DNA from: Calcarisporiella thermophila CBS 279.70
Lineage: Eukaryota; Fungi; Calcarisporiellomycota
Assembly (NCBI RefSeq): GCF_041956535.1
Contig: NW_027192201.1
Span: 346,060 to 410,059 of the forward strand
Direction of reading: 5' to 3'
Length of the DNA: 64,000 bases
Translations under genes and position numbers: made by a program
The notes under the pieces: model-generated
Told to the model about the DNA's origin: nothing
What the model saw: the letters and a program-made list of their open reading frames with translations, nothing else
Database searches by the model: none
In this document: positions 35,084 through 41,712 of the stretch, one piece after another
How the letters are laid out: every line of letters begins with the position of its first letter
Numbering within the stretch: position 1 is the first letter of the stretch

Positions 35084-37015
35084 ATGACAACAACAAAACG
35101 GGAAGAACACAACTACATATCTCTCATTGAATCAAAAGAACAAGATGCGCAAGATTCTCGTGACAAATCACGAAAACGAAAGAGAAGCGAGATAGAGGAG
35201 AAACTCCGTGGAGAGATGCCATGGTTAAAGGGCAAAGATTATTATAAATGTGGGAGTTTTGCGAGAAGGTTTTTGACATTGTAGAATAGTTAACTTGCTA
35301 AACACTTGGGCTGATCTGATCTTTACTTAAAGATTGCATCAAGAAGTTTTGGATTTGGTTCAATACCTGAGCCCAACCCCTGAGGAACATGTTATGCGTC
35401 GTTTGGTAGTCGAACGCGTTCGACAGGTGGTTCACAATTGGTGTCCCGAAGCTTTCATCATGTGCTTTGGAAGCTACGACACCCAGCTCTATTTGCCGAC
35501 AAGGTAAGATTAGAAGAAGTTAGTATTTCACCACAGATCTGATAATATTCTATTTCACGCTAAAGTGACTTGGATTTGGTGATGTATAATGCAAACTCTA
35601 TATCGACTAAACCCGTAGAAATGCTGAAAAGCCTGGCCGAAGCATTAGTTAATGAAGATATAATGGAGGGGAATGTCACAGTTGTCGATAAAGCAAGAGT
35701 AGATAGATAGCGTTTATATATTCTATATTGCGATTACTCACATTTGAATGCTAGGTACCTATCATCAAGTTTAGAGAAAAATATACGGGAATTTGCGTTG
35801 ACATTTCCTGTGAGATTGTCTCGGGTCTCGACGGTGCTCGTATCGTTAAAGATTTTCTTGGTTCCACTCCCGCACTCCGTCCCCTCACCTTATTGATCAA
35901 GCATTACCTTGTCCAGCGTTCAATGAACGAAGTATTTCTTGGCGGCCTTGGTAGCTATGCCGTTTTATGTATGGTGATGAGTTTTCTACAGCTTCATCCT
36001 ATTGTACAATCGGGCTTTATTCAGGCGGAGGAGAACTTAGGAGTATTGTTACTGGAATTTTTTGAACTTTACGGACAGTATTTCAATTACGATAGGGTGG
36101 GGATAAGACTAACCAATCGTGGGTCATATTTTCAAAAGGTGAGAAATATATCAAACTCGATTATTTATTGACACACTTAACAGTGACTTTTCGGTTGGTA
36201 GTCAAAAACTCTGCAGGATATGGAAAAGAGAAGAGAGAAAATCTTGCTAACTATCTTAGATCCACAAGACCCTTGTGAGTATTCATACATATTTGGTTTT
36301 GGTTTATTACTTTTTTCGCCTTTATAACTTCGATTGTTTTTTAGCAAATGATATCGCCAAAGGTACATATCACATAATCCAAATCCGCAAGAGTTTTGCC
36401 ATCGCGTATGAGATTATAACTGCTGCGATATTTCAAGTTTATGGTGCGCAATCCTCTTTGTCAGCCGAAAATATTGCACAGTCTGTTCCAGAAGAGGCTC
36501 GTCAAACTGGCTCAATCCTTGGAGCGGTATTCAGAATTCCACCTGACGTTATGCAGAACCGAGCTCAAATACTTGAGGCCTACCAAGCCGGTTCATTGCA
36601 TCAAGCAGTAGGTGTGACTTATAGTGATGAACCAAAATTACTCAATACGGCAGTAAATGATGAAGCAATGGTTACATCTTTGCTTCAATCACGCGGAACG
36701 AATGTACGCATTGATAAAACGTTGCTTGAGGATGATACCGCCGCAGGACGGGAAGCTCAAAGTGAGGAAAGATCTAAAAAATTACATTTATCGGATACAA
36801 TGCAAGATAGAAGAGAGAATAAAAATAGAGTGGCAGGCGAGGTGGGGGAAATGCAAGAGTTGAGAAGGATAGGCGTGACAGTTAAAGTGGGAGATAATTT
36901 AGCAGATGTGGCGCGATTAGACAAAACTATTATTGGTAAGTCTCATGAGGATGAAAATGAGATCCCACCAGAATATAATACCGAAGAGAGCAAAATAGAG
37001 AGCAAGGAGAATTAA
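35084..37015 (+). CDS. Non-canonical poly(A) polymerase, Trf4/Cid14/PAPD5 family
   Basis: FGSYDTQLYLPT|SDLDL, ARVPIIKF, MNEVFLGGLGSY, NLGVLLLEFFELYG, DPQDP..NDI. Confidence 0.92.
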
Positions 37016-37390
37016 ATGCATATATGCTCAAAATTTTTCATGTTTTGATAATGACACTATAGTGTAATTTTAGTAACCATAGAATATTTCACAATAAAGA
37101 TTTTACTATATAATTGGTATGACTCAAATGTAGGTTAGCTTGGAAAATTTATGCTTACGGACCCGTTAAAGGTCTATTTGTTTTAAAGTAGAGACTAGTA
37201 TTGAACTGGAAAACGATAAATCTTAATCATACCAAATATAATTGCCCGACAATTTCCCCGCATATTAAATTCTACTTTCAACTTGCGGAAATTCAACTAA
37301 CAGACCGAGATCTATTTAATCTAAAATCAACAGTTCATCTTTTTCTCAATTCATTTTACCTATCATGTTTTCAGTTGAAATTTTACGGCT

Positions 37391-38135
37391 ATGACACATC
37401 GTTTTTATCCTCTTTTCGTTCTGCTAATCTTAGCTGTTCTTGGTGCATATGGCTGTGAACAAGAATGTCGAGATGCGATCAACCATGTGTTTGCGGACAA
37501 TTATACACCAAAAATAAAAGAGGAATTTTCAATACTCTACGGAGAATTAAATAGCACTATATCGACAGATCCTCATTATTTAGAGTTATTGCAAGCGATT
37601 ACTGTTGGTAGGTGATAAACTTCGTAAGATATAATAAAAAGATTAAAGTTAATTAAACACCTTTGCAAAAGCTCTTAATGATATACAGGATAATATCGCT
37701 ATCGGCCTTGTAAAAATGATGGATAAATCAGTTTGTAAGTACTATTTTTTATTAATATCACTTTTCCGTATTTTAATTCGTAGATCTTATATATTAGTTT
37801 CCAAATACAAAGGCCACTGCGACTGGGCACCTGGAGAAGTGTGTGGTTCTCCTGTCTCTGTCTCCTATTTCGTTCTTGATGCTTTAAATTTAACACGCAG
37901 CGCCATCAAAAATGAGCTTAAGAACGGCGCAGAACCAAATGGTAGATATGCATCAGCGATATTTACTGCTGTAATAGAAGTAACTGGTAGCGAATACCAC
38001 GTTGAAGAACTTCAAGATGGCGTCAATTACGCGCTAGAAAAATTTAGAATAGATGTAGATGAACATTTCTGCGAAGTAGGTTGTTGGGATAATTGGGTAC
38101 CTAACATAAGGAAGATACTCGCGCAGTATCCATGA
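37391..38135 (+). CDS. Small secreted Cys-containing protein, unknown function
   Basis: Signal peptide then GCEQECR; exons with YKGHC...EVCGSPVS and HFCEVGCW; 2 introns inferred. Confidence 0.65.
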
Positions 38136-38657
38136 TAATTCAACTTGGATATTTCATTACTTGAACTTTCTCTCATCTGGGCTATCTCACCTCATCTCTT
38201 TTCCTGAATAGACTCACTTTTTATCTCTTTATAACTATTATTATTTAGGTTATTCCCTTTCATGTTATTTCTAGCTCACTTTTATCATATGTACAGCGTA
38301 TGAAAACCATGTAGTTTCAAATATGTTTTCTCCCTTGTATATTATCATGCTTATACAGACATAAACTGATATAATTTGTTAATTATAATTTATGGTTGGG
38401 TTTTCTCTCTGACTATTCATAGACTTAAACACTGAATTTAAAATTTTGGAGGAAAAGTTTGGGCTCACATCAATATAAATTTATATATCAGAAGAAGTAT
38501 GCAAAAGATTCGCTTTAAATCAAAATCTGATACAGTTATTTTAGACATATTAAAATTGGACTTTTTTTTTTATTTATCAGACCCATTGTCCTTTTATACC
38601 TCAAAACATTAAAAAACGAGGCTGTTGTAAAACTATTATTCTATCCTACGCTCTCGA

Positions 38658-38774
38658 TTTTTTTTTTCCCCTTGGTATGTATTATTTTAACATCCACTTG
38701 ATGATTTTTATCTGAAGGGAATGGAAGGGTAGACTTCTACGTCAAAATCACCCAGGTACTGCCCCTGGCCTCCC
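38658..38774 (-). mobile_element. Short poly(A)-tailed retro-insertion
   Basis: T10 at left end; flanked by ATCCTACGCTCTCGA (38643) and ATCCTGCGCACTCGA (38775). Confidence 0.6.
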
Positions 38775-38790
38775 ATCCTGCGCACTCGAA

Positions 38791-39464
38791 TTTTTTTTTT
38801 TATCAATCGACGGAGACTTTTATTAGTTTCCGTAGCTTACAAGAGTTAATGATTACAATAAAAGAAGAAAGGGGGGGAATAAAGGGGTGGGGATATAGTT
38901 GGGTGGCAAGGTGGAACTTAGGTTTTGACAATTTATGTTAGCCCAGAAAGGGAGAGAAGAGAAGAAAGCAAAGAAACGCAAGGGGGTAAGAACATAGAGC
39001 AAGGTGATGAACGTGGAGTAAGGGAATAAAGGGTAGATTAGATGTATATAGTGATCGGGTATTTGGTGAAAAATATGAAATAAAGAGGAGAGGAGGTAGG
39101 GAGAGAGGAAGGGTTGCTCCGTCACTCCAGTTTTAGTTTTGCTCTATCCGAACTTTCTATTACCGCTCCCTGACTGCACCACCTTCTTCGGAATAACTCT
39201 ATCTCTCGTCTTTTTCGTGCCTTTATCAGTTCAGCTCCGATAGTCTCCTCGATGTCCATTTTGGCACGGACGATGATTGTCTCGGGTGACGCTCGAATGC
39301 ATTCGAAGTGGTAGGCGATTCAGTCCCGATAGATTTGCCATAACACCGAATCGAAGACGATTTGAGCCGTGTGTCTTACTGTCCTCGGGGCTTCTGGTAG
39401 GTCGCCAAGTACGAGGTTCCTGGGGCTCAGCACCTGAGTGTTTAGGGGGTCTGAGATGGTGTTG
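38791..39464 (-). mobile_element. 5'-truncated L1/Tx1-like non-LTR retrotransposon fragment (ORF2 C-terminus, 3'UTR, AATAAA, poly(A))
   Basis: Minus frame ending at 39122 reads ...VFDSVLWQIYRD*IAYHF...ELFRRRW...KLE*, like the L1-clade WxIWxxR..F and FxxxW tail. T11 at 38791-38801; duplicated flanks ending CACTCGAA(T). Confidence 0.8.
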
Positions 39465-39539
39465 ATCCTCTCACTCGAATACCTTGTGACTGTCAAAATT
39501 ACTTGTTCATAATAAAAACCAATTTTCTCGTAACAAGTC

Positions 39540-39787
39540 TGTCATAAACTAGAGCGATATAACTAGGGGATGCTCGGGGAACATAGATAAAACTATAGGT
39601 TTATTCAAGAACAAGGCGTGTATGTTGGAAGTTCTCATTAGAGTGTTCCTTTTATACTATAAGATATAATAACTATATAACCTGTTAACTAATAAAGCTA
39701 ATGAATACTGGTTTATAACTAGTTCCTAATTAATGTCGGAGCTTGAATATCGTTGGAATAGCTTGATATGTGACTCGACTTATGACA
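39540..39787. mobile_element. Element B: solo-LTR-like, 248 bp
   Basis: TGTCATAA...TTATGACA inverted termini; AGTC on both sides. Confidence 0.8.
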
Positions 39788-39791
39788 AGTC

Positions 39792-40210
39792 TGTTACGTG
39801 GGTTTTGGGGTTTATCGTGAATATTTTTGCGTAAAGAAAACAATTGAAAGATTTTCTTGAAAAAAATAAGACAATAAATTTCAAGACTATTACTCAATAT
39901 AAAAAAACTAATCCGCCTCCCCGTTCACTCACGCTTGAATCTCTTCTTATATAACAAAATTAAACTAAATAGAACGAACCGATTAAACAACTGGTTAAAC
40001 GAACTGAATAGACAAACTGGTTAAACAACTAGTTTAACAAAACAGAACAAACTTGAATAAAATTTTCAAAGCGCTAGTAATTTGCCGAAAGGTTATTATG
40101 GTAACAAAAACTAATTGTGCATAAAGTTAAAGAAGAAAAGAAGTATTTTTTTTTGGCTTGTAGTGGCGCAGTTATGACTGTCTGTACGAAATACCGATAT
40201 TCCCGTAACA
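39792..40210. mobile_element. Element C: solo-LTR-like, 419 bp
   Basis: TGTTACG...CGTAACA inverted termini; AGTC on both sides. Confidence 0.8.
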
Positions 40211-40547
40211 AGTCTGTTACGGGCGAAAGGAGGTTTGTGCGGAGGGGTATCCGGATCTTAATAATAAAAATAAGAGATTGGTCTTAATTATTCAGGGAAT
40301 TGGTGTTGAACATTAAAATAAACCGAAGGGTTTAAATAGAATTGTGATCAAAGGAGAATAATTCTCACTGGTGTTCAAGGATGAGATAGATAAGACAACA
40401 AAGTATCAATCAACATCAATAAGATAGCCATGAGGGAGTATAAGAGTAACCACGAGGGCGGCGAGTAACCACGAGGGGTCGGCAACGTAGCGGTAATCAA
40501 TTCCATTGGCTACCCTACTTGAAAGATATCGCGCTTTCTGAATGTCT

Positions 40548-40678
40548 ATTTTTTTTGATCAATGCCGAGTCTTTATTGTATAGGAAGACTCTAAAATATA
40601 ATTGTTACATTATTATAAGCAATAAAGTGAAAGGGAAGCCAAAGTTAAAGCTTTGTGTGATATCGTAGATCGAAATGA
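40548..40678 (-). mobile_element. 5'-truncated poly(A) retroelement 3' end
   Basis: T8, then GATCAATGCCGAGTCTTTATT (AATAAA on minus; resembles the 3' end at 38802); perfect 15-bp flanks GCTTTCTGAATGTCT at 40533 and 40679. Confidence 0.8.
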
Positions 40679-40693
40679 GCTTTCTGAATGTCT

Positions 40694-41101
40694 TATTTTT
40701 TTTTTTTGNNNNNNNNNNNNNNNNNNNNNNNNNNNNNNNNNNNNNNNNNNNNNNNNNNNNNNNNNNNNNNNNNNNNNNNNNNNNNNNNNNNNNNNNNNNN
40801 NNNNNNNNNNNNNNNNNNNNNNNNNNNNNNNNNNNNNNNNNNNNNNNNNNNNNNNNNNNNNNNNNNNNNNNNNNNNNNNNNNNNNNNNNNNNNNNNNNNN
40901 NNNNNNNNNNNNNNNNNNNNNNNNNNNNNNNNNNNNNNNNNNNNNNNNNNNNNNNNNNNNNNNNNNNNNNNNNNNNNNNNNNNNNNNNNNNNNNNNNNNN
41001 NNNNNNNNNNNNNNNNNNNNNNNNNNNNNNNNNNNNNNNNNNNNNNNNNNNNNNNNNNNNNNNNNNNNNNNNNNNNNNNNNNNNNNNNNNNNNNNNNNNN
41101 N
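40694..41101 (-). mobile_element. Further poly(A) insertion, mostly hidden in assembly gap (40709-41101)
   Basis: T12 follows the second GCTTTCTGAATGTCT; a third copy resumes at 41102 after the gap. Confidence 0.6.
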
Positions 41102-41171
41102 GCTTTCTGAATGTCTATGTGACTTCCTCTGTGACTTCCTCGTACAAAAACCAATTATCTCGTAACAAGTC

Positions 41172-41516
41172 TGTTACAGGCAAAGGGAGATTTCGTGGAG
41201 AGCTGTGCGGATTCCTTAATAATAAAAATAAGAGATTGGTGAGGAACAGTAAAACAAAATAGAGGGGTTTAAATAGAATTAAGAGATAAAGGAAATAGCT
41301 CAACTGGTGTTCAAGGATAAATAAAGATAAACCAACAAAATAGCAATCAACCTCAACAAAGTAACCATGAGGGAGCATAAGAGTAACCACGAGGGGTCGG
41401 CAACGTAGCGGTAAACAATTCTATTGGCTGCTCCACTTTAAAGATATCGCGCTTCATGAATGCCTATGTGACTGCCTCTGTGACTTCCCCGTACAAAAAC
41501 CAATTATCTCGTAACA
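41172..41516. mobile_element. Element E: intact solo-LTR-like, 345 bp, abutting the tRNA leader
   Basis: TGTTAC...GTAACA termini; AGTC flanks; ends at -12 relative to the tRNA. Confidence 0.85.
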
Positions 41517-41527
41517 AGTCACGAATA

Positions 41528-41544
41528 GCTCTAGTGGCGTAATT

Positions 41545-41584
<40 letters not shown>

Positions 41585-41601
41585 GAGTCCACCCTTGAGC
41601 G
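41528..41601 (+). tRNA. tRNA-Asn (GUU)
   Basis: GCTCTAG/CTTGAGC acceptor, A-box TGGCGTAATTGG, anticodon arm TTCGG-CT-GTT-AA-CCGAA, B-box GGTTCGAGTCC, T-run terminator immediately after. Confidence 0.96.
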
Positions 41602-41712
41602 ATTTTTTCACTCTAATTATTTTTGTTTAACGATTATGAAGTGACTGTTTATTTAAATATTATTTGTTGCATGTTTTATATCAATTAACATCTCATCTTG
41701 TGTCCTAGGAAA

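What the first reader, a model, noticed from the sequence alone, without database searches (positions are those of the whole stretch)
39529..41527. Five solo-LTR-like elements stacked at one nucleotide position, each followed by AGTC, the tRNA's -11..-8 sequence
Seen: AGTC follows a ..ACA terminus at 39536, 39788, 40211, 41168 and 41517, and the first four run straight into TGT. Units of 248, 419, 345 bp and one interrupted unit have TG..CA inverted termini (TGTCATAA/TTATGACA, TGTTACG/CGTAACA). The last AGTC is 7 bp from tRNA-Asn. At least three distinct internal sequences (B, C, D/E) use the same site. Established: Ty3 and Dictyostelium DGLT-A/Skipper-2 are tRNA-associated gypsy elements, Ty3 integrates at the Pol III start site, and LTR-LTR recombination leaves solo LTRs. 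Inference: several Ty3/gypsy families with 4-bp TSDs integrated repeatedly at base precision, each regenerating the target and displacing earlier ones. No gag/pol is visible, so non-autonomous TIR elements are not excluded.
Basis: partly seen in the sequence, partly recalled or inferred. Interest (0 to 1): 0.85.

Follow-up and report, generated by a model that had tools for sequence, protein, structure and literature searches.

The report
Solo-LTR stack upstream of tRNA-Asn
Five leftover end-pieces (solo LTRs) of Ty3/gypsy retrotransposons lie in a row at exactly the same four bases, 8 to 11 bases in front of a tRNA gene, because in this fungus several such families aim at tRNA genes, a known strategy seen here in a fungal lineage where the papers searched do not describe it.

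Summary
A truncated LTR remnant (A) and four complete LTRs (B 248 bp, C 419 bp, D 384 bp, E 345 bp) sit head to tail. Each is followed by AGTC, and the last AGTC lies 7 nt before tRNA-Asn(GTT).

The assembly gap lies inside a poly(A)-type non-LTR insertion in D. D's two halves add up to the 384 bp of intact D copies elsewhere, so the gap does not affect the reading.

- B, C and E each have 36 to 61 or more matches in the genome, with 4-bp target duplications that differ from locus to locus.
- In the fetched loci, 34 of 44 tRNA genes have an LTR end of families A-F 8-23 nt upstream. The same LTR end faces the tRNA in 33 cases against 1.
- C-like and E-type LTRs flank gag-PR-RT-RNaseH-IN, with a primer binding site matching tRNA-Trp and a polypurine tract.
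- These junctions show that the U3 start faces the tRNA, so the elements point away from it.
- B's autonomous partner was not found.

A protein match points to Calcarisporiella thermophila as the host. No paper in the searched library describes this system there.

It is a new member of a known kind (Ty3, Tj1 and DGLT-A-like Pol III targeting). It differs by a 4-bp duplication, a near-fixed divergent orientation and no Ty3-type chromodomain.

Earlier scan notes had already read this same stretch, and had noted tRNA-targeted LINE/SINE stacks elsewhere in this genome.

The parts
38643..38657 (-). Fragment of LTR A that is the first copy of the 15-nt target duplication (ATCCTACGCTCTCGA) of non-LTR insertions in A
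   Evidence: It matches positions 254-263 of an A-family LTR.
38658..38774 (-). Short poly(A)-tailed non-LTR repeat (poly-T on the + strand), the first insertion in LTR A
   Evidence: The repeat at 38646-38776 has copies 89-93% identical in C22 and C40 loci. T-run at 38658-38667.
38775..38790 (-). Second copy of the target duplication (ATCCTGCGCACTCGAA)
38791..39464 (-). About 690 bp of the 3' part of a LINE-like non-LTR element: poly(A) end away from the tRNA, 5' end towards it
   Evidence: Copies 90-93% identical in C81, C45, C27, C7 and C44 loci. T-run at 38791-38801.
39465..39535 (-). LTR A remnant: the third duplication copy (39465-39479) plus the U3-start end (...CCAATTTTCTCGTAACA on the + strand)
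   Evidence: 62 nt are 80-86% identical to the ends of A-family LTRs in C14, C43, C27 and C9.
39536..39539 (.). AGTC, target duplication copy 1
39540..39787 (-). Solo LTR B, 248 bp, TGTCATAA..TTATGACA. Strand assigned by analogy only
   Evidence: 38 genomic matches. 9 of 10 full copies have perfect 4-bp duplications that differ between loci.
39788..39791 (.). AGTC, copy 2
39792..40210 (-). Solo LTR C, 419 bp. The U5 end is at 39792 and the U3 start at 40210
   Evidence: 36 genomic matches. Related C-like LTRs in C13 and C5 end ...ACGTAACA, followed by TT, the tRNA-Trp primer binding site and gag.
40211..40214 (.). AGTC, copy 3
40215..40549 (-). Solo LTR D, distal 335 bp. Its last 17 nt (40533-40549) are the first copy of a non-LTR target duplication
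   Evidence: 98.5% identical to intact 384-bp D copies.
40550..40678 (-). 129-bp poly(A)-tailed non-LTR repeat inserted in D
   Evidence: 97-99% identical copies at C2:221k, C11:283k and C7:10k.
40679..40695 (-). Second copy of the 17-nt duplication (GCTTTCTGAATGTCTTA)
40696..41101 (-). Second poly(A)-type insertion in D: 12 T and a G, then the assembly gap 40709-41101
   Evidence: Its content is unread.
41102..41167 (-). Solo LTR D, proximal 66 bp. The third duplication copy is 41102-41118, and the U3 start is at 41167
   Evidence: 92-97% identical to the ends of other D/E copies.
41168..41171 (.). AGTC, copy 4
41172..41516 (-). Solo LTR E, 345 bp. The U5 end is at 41172 and the U3 start at 41516
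   Evidence: 61 genomic matches. In C9 the same family follows pol and the tract AAGGGGGAGA, beginning TGTTACGAGATAATTGG.
41517..41520 (.). AGTC, copy 5, at -11..-8 of the tRNA
41528..41601 (+). tRNA-Asn(GTT) gene, followed by a run of six T at 41603-41608
   Evidence: ARAGORN. Rfam RF00005 scores 67.6 bits at C11:387587-387660.

Best explanation
The array records successive insertions of Ty3/gypsy LTR retrotransposons from at least four families into one 4-bp target, AGTC at -11..-8 of a tRNA-Asn gene. Each integration duplicated AGTC. Because the position is set by distance from the tRNA gene, the next element entered the tRNA-proximal copy and pushed older elements outwards. LTR-LTR recombination then reduced each element to a solo LTR that keeps its duplication. 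All units have their U3 start towards the tRNA, so a full element would be transcribed away from it.

Shown here: the anatomy of the array, the locus-specific 4-bp duplications, the tRNA association, the orientation bias, and the retrotransposon nature of the C-like and D/E families.

Inferred by analogy with Ty3, Tj1 and DGLT-A: the integrase complex is tethered to the Pol III initiation factors (TFIIIB and/or TFIIIC) bound at the tRNA gene. That tether would set both distance and orientation.

Two LTRs (A and D) were each hit, while they lay next to the tRNA, by a second system of poly(A) LINE/SINE elements. These insert about 60-85 nt upstream of tRNA genes with their 5' end towards the tRNA. 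This gives an independent sign that A and D were once tRNA-proximal, and that E arrived after D.
For: - Anatomy and five AGTC copies. tRNA position.
- Family copy numbers.
- Duplications are 4 bp and differ by locus. 9 of 10 B copies are perfect.
- tRNA association. 34 of 44 tRNA genes, covering 16 amino acids, have an A-F LTR end 8-23 nt upstream, mostly 10-11 or 13-15 nt. Orientation is 33:1. Two further tRNAs 10 nt from a B end.
- Orientation and retrotransposon identity. PPT + LTR start in C9. PPT in C16. LTR end + TT + TGGTGGGACGTGAGAGAC + gag in C13 and C5. That primer binding site equals the 18 3'-terminal nt of tRNA-Trp(CCA) with CCA added.
- Domains: gag, CCHC, PR, RT and RNase H, then H2C2 and rve. 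The closest solved RT is Ty3 (E 4e-96). The IN fold matches PFV and Ty3 intasome subunits.
- Stacks that reuse one 4-mer occur at other loci: C86 ACAG x2, C45 GAAA x2, C14 TTTC x2 and ATTT x2.
- D is complete across the gap.
- LINE/SINE insertions with 15-17-nt duplications in A and D, and the same geometry elsewhere.
Against: - No read-level confirmation was possible, because no sequencing run was listed. The assembly has many gaps at repeats.
- The left boundary of the array was not found, so the original AGTC-flanked start is unverified.
- B has no demonstrated internal region, PBS or PPT.
- The two internal copies examined are flanked by gaps or by an odd inverted duplication. No single element with both LTRs and matching duplications was seen.
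- Genome-wide the distance varies from 8 to 18 nt, so five hits on one 4-mer need a locus-specific determinant that I cannot name.
- The tRNA-proximal-entry rule, and so the age order of B and C, is inferred.
- The sample of loci was chosen by LTR similarity, not by tRNA.
Confidence: 0.9

Rival explanations
1. Some or all units, B above all, are non-autonomous elements rather than solo LTRs of autonomous elements. They would be terminal-inverted-repeat DNA transposons, or LTRs of TRIM/LARD-type passengers mobilised in trans.
For: No internal region, PBS or PPT was found next to any B copy in 228 kb of fetched loci. B has an 8-bp terminal inverted repeat.
Against: - B shares the TG..CA ends, the 4-bp duplication, the distance to tRNA genes and the 9:1 orientation bias with families shown to be LTRs.
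- C-like and D/E LTRs flank gag-pol with a PBS and a PPT.
- A cut-and-paste DNA transposon would not be expected to keep one end towards the tRNA.
- A TRIM/LARD-type passenger would still integrate through the same integrase, so the array reading stands.
Confidence: 0.06
2. The stack is an assembly artefact: repeats from different loci were chained together during scaffolding.
For: There is a gap at 40709-41101. Many N runs lie at LTRs elsewhere. An exact inverted duplication around the C9 element looks like a misjoin. No reads could be laid.
Against: - All five junctions carry the locus-specific AGTC, which also abuts this tRNA's own 5' flank. Other copies of the same families carry other 4-mers, and chaining foreign repeats would import foreign flanks.
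- Junctions A/B, B/C, C/D and D/E lie in continuous sequence away from the gap.
- D's halves fit an intact 384-bp copy exactly.
- Similar stacks occur at several other loci.
Confidence: 0.03
3. The near-fixed orientation and the exact reuse of one 4-mer come from selection after integration, not from the integration machinery. For example, insertions in the other orientation or at other offsets might harm tRNA expression and be lost.
For: Only old, fixed copies were examined. The authors of the Tj1 study raise the same caveat for its fixed orientation (PMC4600332). One reverse-oriented B copy exists (C26 tRNA-Met), and a few head-to-head LTR junctions, so the other orientation is possible.
Against: - 33:1 across six LTR families and 16 amino-acid specificities is a strong bias.
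- In Ty3, orientation is known to depend on an IN-TFIIIC contact (PMC6101501), so a mechanistic basis has precedent.
- Distances vary by 10 nt between loci without apparent loss of the tRNA genes.
Confidence: 0.3
4. AGTC is part of the elements or a sequence-specific target, not a position-defined duplication.
For: Five identical 4-mers at this locus.
Against: Other copies of B, C and E carry more than 12 different flanking 4-mers, matched on both sides of each copy. The spacer sequences before tRNAs share no motif.
Confidence: 0.01

Closest known systems
Ty3 (sigma LTR) of Saccharomyces cerevisiae
   Same: A Ty3/gypsy element. The RT/RNase H is the best match among solved structures (E 4e-96). 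It integrates in a narrow window just upstream of tRNA genes (~15 bp; PMC6101501) and leaves solo LTRs there. The IN has NED-NTD-CCD, a helical linker and an SH3-like CTD.
   Different: - Ty3 makes a 5-bp duplication (PMC6673722). Here it is 4 bp.
- Ty3 inserts in both orientations (PMC5911963). Here it is 33:1 one way.
- Ty3 IN carries a C-terminal chromodomain that fixes the site (PMC8632968). Here the IN ends in a 37-residue disordered tail with no such domain.
Tj1 of Schizosaccharomyces japonicus
   Same: A Ty3/gypsy element that inserts 5-11 bp upstream of the mature tRNA 5' end, with a fixed orientation. It forms clusters where tRNA genes cluster (PMC4600332).
   Different: [quoted passage not shown] Here the U3 start faces the tRNA, so transcription is divergent.
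- Tj1 has a 5-bp duplication. Here it is 4 bp.
- Tj1 also hits 5S genes. None was seen here in a limited test.
DGLT-A with TRE5 of Dictyostelium discoideum
   Same: [quoted passage not shown] It coexists with TRE5 non-LTR elements about 50 bp upstream in the opposite transcriptional orientation (PMC5006619, PMC6101501, PMC5911963). The pairing here, of an LTR system next to the tRNA and a LINE/SINE system 60-85 nt upstream with its 5' end towards the tRNA, mirrors this.
   Different: The host is a fungus, not an amoeba. DGLT-A inserts in either orientation and has one gag-pol ORF. Here the orientation is near-fixed and IN is a separate ORF in the copies seen. Several LTR families are involved rather than one.

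Membership tests
Ty3/gypsy (Metaviridae) LTR retrotransposon | LTRs bounded by TG..CA with short inverted termini | tested here: met
   All units start TGT and end ACA.
Ty3/gypsy (Metaviridae) LTR retrotransposon | Short target duplication of fixed length whose sequence differs between loci | tested here: met
   4 bp, with more than 12 different sequences.
Ty3/gypsy (Metaviridae) LTR retrotransposon | Primer binding site complementary to a tRNA 3' end just after the 5' LTR | tested here: met
   An 18-nt match to tRNA-Trp(CCA)+CCA, 2 nt after C-like LTRs and in the C16 E-type copy. Not seen for B.
Ty3/gypsy (Metaviridae) LTR retrotransposon | Polypurine tract just before the 3' LTR | tested here: met
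   AAGGGGGAGA abuts the E-type LTR start in C9, and AAGGGGGAAAT occurs in C16.
Ty3/gypsy (Metaviridae) LTR retrotransposon | Domain order gag-PR-RT-RNaseH-IN | tested here: met
   Pfam on the C9 and C16 copies.
Solo LTR (product of LTR-LTR recombination) | A single LTR flanked by the same duplication on both sides, with no internal region | tested here: met
   B, C, D and E in the window each have AGTC on both sides. 9 of 10 B copies elsewhere show the same. For A the left side was not found.
Pol III-targeted Ty3-like elements (Ty3, Tj1, DGLT-A) | Insertions concentrated within about 20 bp upstream of many different tRNA genes | tested here: met
   34 of 44 tRNAs, 16 amino acids, 8-23 nt. The loci were chosen by LTR similarity, so this is not a full census.
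Pol III-targeted Ty3-like elements (Ty3, Tj1, DGLT-A) | Integrase contact with TFIIIB or TFIIIC | not testable with these tools
   It needs binding assays.
Pol III-targeted Ty3-like elements (Ty3, Tj1, DGLT-A) | Use of other Pol III genes (5S, U6) | tested here: inconclusive
   Rfam on 20 LTR loci in which ARAGORN had found no tRNA found only two more tRNAs and no 5S or U6. Many flanks read N.
Ty3 proper | C-terminal chromodomain on IN that positions the intasome on TFIIIB | tested here: not met
   No Pfam chromodomain at E<=0.1. The model ends with an SH3-like CTD and a disordered 413-449 tail.
Ty3 proper | 5-bp target duplication | tested here: not met
   4 bp.
TIR DNA transposon / MITE | Terminal inverted repeats, no LTR-type internal junctions, and either end able to face a target | tested here: not met
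   C-like and D/E families have PBS, PPT and gag-pol junctions. One end faces the tRNA in 33 of 34 cases. For B alone this is inconclusive.

The most novel reading that the evidence does not exclude
An early-diverging fungus (Calcarisporiellomycota) holds its own tRNA-gene-targeting retroelement community. It has several Ty3/gypsy families that dock on the Pol III initiation complex without a Ty3-type chromodomain, in one fixed divergent orientation, and reuse the same base pair at a locus. It also has a TRE5-like LINE/SINE system about 60-85 nt upstream. This would be a further independent invention of Pol III targeting, with the opposite polarity to Tj1. The layered arrays would serve as a readable relative time-line of family activity.
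Probability: 0.4. Interest if true: 0.65.

Novelty: new member of a known kind. Interest (0 to 1): 0.5.

Why it matters
Targeting of tRNA genes by retrotransposons is a textbook case of safe-haven integration. In the reviews I read it is listed for yeasts (including fission yeast) and for social amoebae (PMC5911963, PMC5006619).

This locus, with the genome-wide pattern behind it, extends the strategy to a deep fungal branch and adds three features.
- **Orientation.** It is near-fixed and opposite to that of Tj1, which in 2015 was called the only wild-type LTR element with a fixed orientation (PMC4600332).
- **Precision.** The precision is achieved without the chromodomain that positions Ty3.
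- **Second layer.** A LINE/SINE layer lies at a second fixed distance. Together the layers make arrays that record the order of insertions.

The system offers a natural comparison for how intasomes read the Pol III initiation complex. It does not change the known principle.

Tried and rejected
- **Reads.** The look-up of sequencing runs listed no run for 39400-40700. The array and the gap could not be checked with reads, and read laying was not used.
- **More genome sequence.** The C16 copy has N runs where its LTRs should be. The C9 copy has an exact inverted duplication at its left side, so it gives only the 3' junction.
- **Left boundary of A.** A sensitive alignment of a 322-bp A-family LTR against 36001-39540 found only the terminal 62 nt and a 10-nt piece. 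The AGTCTGT at 36480 is at chance level and lies in unique, probably genic sequence.
- **Other Pol III genes.** No 5S or U6 was found next to LTRs in 20 loci where ARAGORN had found no tRNA.
- **Relatives in other assemblies.** Contigs carrying the nearest IN relatives (34-37% identical) hold only internal sequence, so no flanks were available to test targeting in other species.
- **Literature.** Two searches for this fungus with retrotransposon, tRNA or transposable-element terms found nothing relevant. A broad search on early-diverging fungi was swamped by 'sinensis' matching 'SINE'.
- **Rejected readings.** A sequence-specific AGTC target, and tandem duplication of one unit, because the units belong to different families.
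Full report
**1. What is in the sequence**

A sequence ending ...CTCGTAACA stops at 39535. After it come four units bounded by TGT...ACA: B 39540-39787 (248 bp), C 39792-40210 (419 bp), D from 40215 to 41167 (interrupted), and E 41172-41516 (345 bp). AGTC follows every one of the five ACA ends. The last AGTC (41517-41520) is followed by ACGAATA and then tRNA-Asn(GTT) at 41528-41601 (ARAGORN; Rfam gives the same start). The gene ends with a run of six T.

AGTCTGT occurs 7 times in the window, about the number expected by chance, but four of the seven are these junctions. B and C share no similarity with each other or with D and E. D and E are 76% identical.

**2. The gap**

The left edge of the gap reads GCTTTCTGAATGTCTTA followed by 12 T. 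The right edge resumes with GCTTTCTGAATGTCTAT and the rest of D. The same 17-mer also ends the left part of D at 40533-40549.

D therefore carries two stacked poly(A)-type insertions at one site, each with a 17-nt target duplication. The first is a 129-bp repeat that is 97-99% identical to copies at three other loci. The second holds the gap. D-left (335 bp) is 98.5% identical over its whole length to intact D-family LTRs of 384 bp at C18 and C11:889k. D-left plus the 49 nt after the last duplication copy also make 384 bp. Nothing of the LTR is missing, and the gap does not bear on the finding. No sequencing run was listed for this stretch, so this rests on sequence logic and not on reads.

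**3. The fifth unit**

A is only a remnant. Its last 62 nt match the ends of an LTR family seen in C14, C43, C27 and C9. Three copies of a 15-16-nt duplication (ATCCTnCnCnCTCGA[A], at 38643, 38775 and 39465) bracket two more poly(A) insertions. One is a 131-bp repeat and the other about 690 bp of a LINE-like 3' end. Left of 38643 the sequence is unique, so the original left boundary of the array was not found.

**4. Genome-wide behaviour**

Searching the window's own genome gave at least 61, 38 and 36 matches for E, B and C. Full copies are flanked by 4-bp duplications that match on both sides and differ between loci. Nine of ten B copies are perfect, with nine different 4-mers. AGTC is therefore a locus-specific duplication. 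It is neither part of the elements nor a sequence target.

In the 71 non-overlapping fetched loci (228 kb), ARAGORN found 44 real tRNA genes for 16 amino acids. Thirty-four have an end of families A-F 8-23 nt upstream. Most spacings are 10-11 or 13-15 nt, and ARAGORN starts can be off by 1. By eye, six more have ends of further LTR families. Rfam found two more intron-bearing tRNAs, one of them 10 nt from a B end.

The same end of the LTR faces the tRNA in 33 of 34 cases. Stacks are common, and often reuse one 4-mer: ACAG twice in C86, GAAA twice in C45, TTTC twice and ATTT twice in C14. The window's stack of five is the largest I saw.

**5. What the units are**

The integrase family PF00665 has 21 matches in the genome. 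Two copies were read.

- In C9 and C16 the internal part encodes gag (Retrotrans_gag, CCHC), protease, RT and RNase H, and then IN (H2C2 and rve) as a second ORF. This is the Ty3/gypsy domain order.
- In C9, pol is followed by AAGGGGGAGA and then an LTR 93% identical to E, beginning TGTTACGAGATAATTGG. This is the reverse complement of E's tRNA-proximal end.
- In C13 and C5, C-like LTRs end ...ACGTAACA, the reverse complement of C's distal end. They are followed by TT, TGGTGGGACGTGAGAGAC and gag. C16 has the same 18-mer before gag.
- That 18-mer is the exact complement of the 3' end of tRNA-Trp(CCA) with CCA added.

C-like and D/E units are thus true LTRs of Ty3/gypsy elements primed by tRNA-Trp. 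Their U3 start faces the tRNA gene, so a full element at this site would be transcribed away from the tRNA. For B no internal junction was found. Its shared termini type, duplication length, distance and orientation bias make an LTR likely, but whether it belongs to an autonomous element is open.

**6. Integrase**

Among solved structures, the RT/RNase H is closest to Ty3 (E 4e-96), and IN matches PFV and Ty3 IN. A model of IN from a 26-sequence alignment (pLDDT 82) shows an N-terminal extension, an HHCC domain, the catalytic core, a long helical linker and an SH3-like CTD. It then ends in a disordered tail at 413-449. Foldseek ranks PFV and Ty3 intasome chains first. Pfam finds no chromodomain at E<=0.1.

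In Ty3, a cryptic chromodomain after the CTD contacts TFIIIB and sets the site 'with extreme precision' (PMC8632968). That domain is absent here.

**7. Mechanism**

Shown: repeated integration at one 4-bp site defined by its place before a tRNA gene, regeneration of the target by duplication, reduction to solo LTRs that keep their duplications, and a strong orientation bias.

Inferred: tethering of the intasome to TFIIIB and/or TFIIIC, as in Ty3 (TBP/Brf1, with Tfc1 affecting orientation) or DGLT-A (Tfc4) (PMC6101501).

Also inferred: new elements enter the tRNA-proximal AGTC, so distance from the tRNA gives age. Support comes from the second system. Its duplications lie 49-66 nt (D) and 56-70 nt (A) from the LTR's proximal end. 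That is about 60-81 nt from the tRNA if that LTR was then adjacent to it. This is the same geometry as SINE and LINE insertions upstream of other tRNAs. E, B and C carry none.

Distances vary from 8 to 18 nt between loci, so the exact reuse at one locus needs a local determinant that I cannot name. Selection after integration could also contribute to the orientation bias. The Tj1 authors raise the same caveat (PMC4600332).

**8. Comparison with known systems**

- **Ty3:** same class and same target region, but a 5-bp duplication, both orientations and a chromodomain.
- **DGLT-A with TRE5:** the same pairing of an LTR system next to the tRNA with a non-LTR system further upstream, but in an amoeba and in either orientation.

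The C16 IN ORF is 100% identical to a protein that NCBI names from Calcarisporiella thermophila, on a contig of the same length as C16. The host is therefore most likely this fungus, phylum Calcarisporiellomycota. The window also encodes chitin synthase and actin. No paper in the searched library links this fungus with retrotransposons or tRNA targeting.

**9. Verdict**

This is a new member of a known kind. Its distinguishing features are the 4-bp duplication, the near-fixed divergent orientation, the lack of a Ty3-type chromodomain, the presence of several families at once, and a LINE/SINE layer.

Earlier notes of this scan had read the same stretch in the same way, and had flagged tRNA-targeted non-LTR stacks on other pieces of this genome. 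I tested the parts that bear on this locus. A word search of the notes for LTR stacks returned nothing.

Noticed in passing
window 38643-39479 and 40533-41118; loci such as L008 (C7:809184-812492), L075 (C18:380996-384106), L047 (C43:82141-84068): A second tRNA-targeting system. Poly(A) LINE fragments and a roughly 350-bp SINE insert about 60-85 nt upstream of tRNA genes, with their 5' end towards the tRNA and 15-28-nt duplications, usually inside the proximal LTR. The SINE has a tRNA-like head GGGGGAGGGTTAGTGTAGTGG... with an encoded CCA, a body of about 270 nt and an A-tail. At least 20 SINE copies lie in 228 kb of fetched loci. ARAGORN reports the head as 'tRNA-???'.
   Followed up: partly
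L027+L090+L006 (C9:523723-531923): C9:525002-525146 is an exact inverted copy of C9:530839-530983. The gag ORF starts in the middle of an inverted E-type LTR (position 149) with no PBS. This is either an inversion between LTRs or a misassembly.
   Followed up: no
L091 (C16:655800-662300); L090/L006 (C9): IN is a separate ORF. In the C16 copy, stop codon(s) in the same reading frame follow RNase H, and the IN ORF resumes 24 nt later. In C9 the two ORFs overlap by 58 nt in different frames. The nearest relatives in other assemblies (P0002-P0005, 34-37% identical) are also IN-only ORFs of about 450 aa, and L092 has gag, PR-RT-RH and IN as three called genes. I only observed this. Whether it reflects read-through, frameshifting or decay is open.
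   Followed up: partly
Many E-family copies, e.g. L003, L004, L005, L009, L011: A common E variant carries a 76-80-bp AT-rich insert with a 28-nt internal duplication (E positions 43-70) near the U5 end. The window's D and E lack it.
   Followed up: no
L034 (C27 tRNA-Gly), L075 (C18 tRNA-Val), L036 (C23 tRNA-Asn), L049 (C109 tRNA-Glu): LTR family F (TGTTAGAATC...GATTCCAACA) sits 14-18 nt from the tRNA. B, C and E most often sit 10-11 nt away, though they range to 16 nt and more. This may reflect a family-specific offset.
   Followed up: no
G000 matches of GTCTCTCACGTCCCA, e.g. C7:71974-71988 in L005: The primer tRNA is tRNA-Trp(CCA). Its gene in L005 itself has an E-type LTR 14-15 nt upstream.
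   Followed up: yes
window 37716-38135 and 36275-37015: ORFs directly left of the array lie in unique sequence. The array is thus wedged between a protein-coding region and the tRNA.
   Followed up: no
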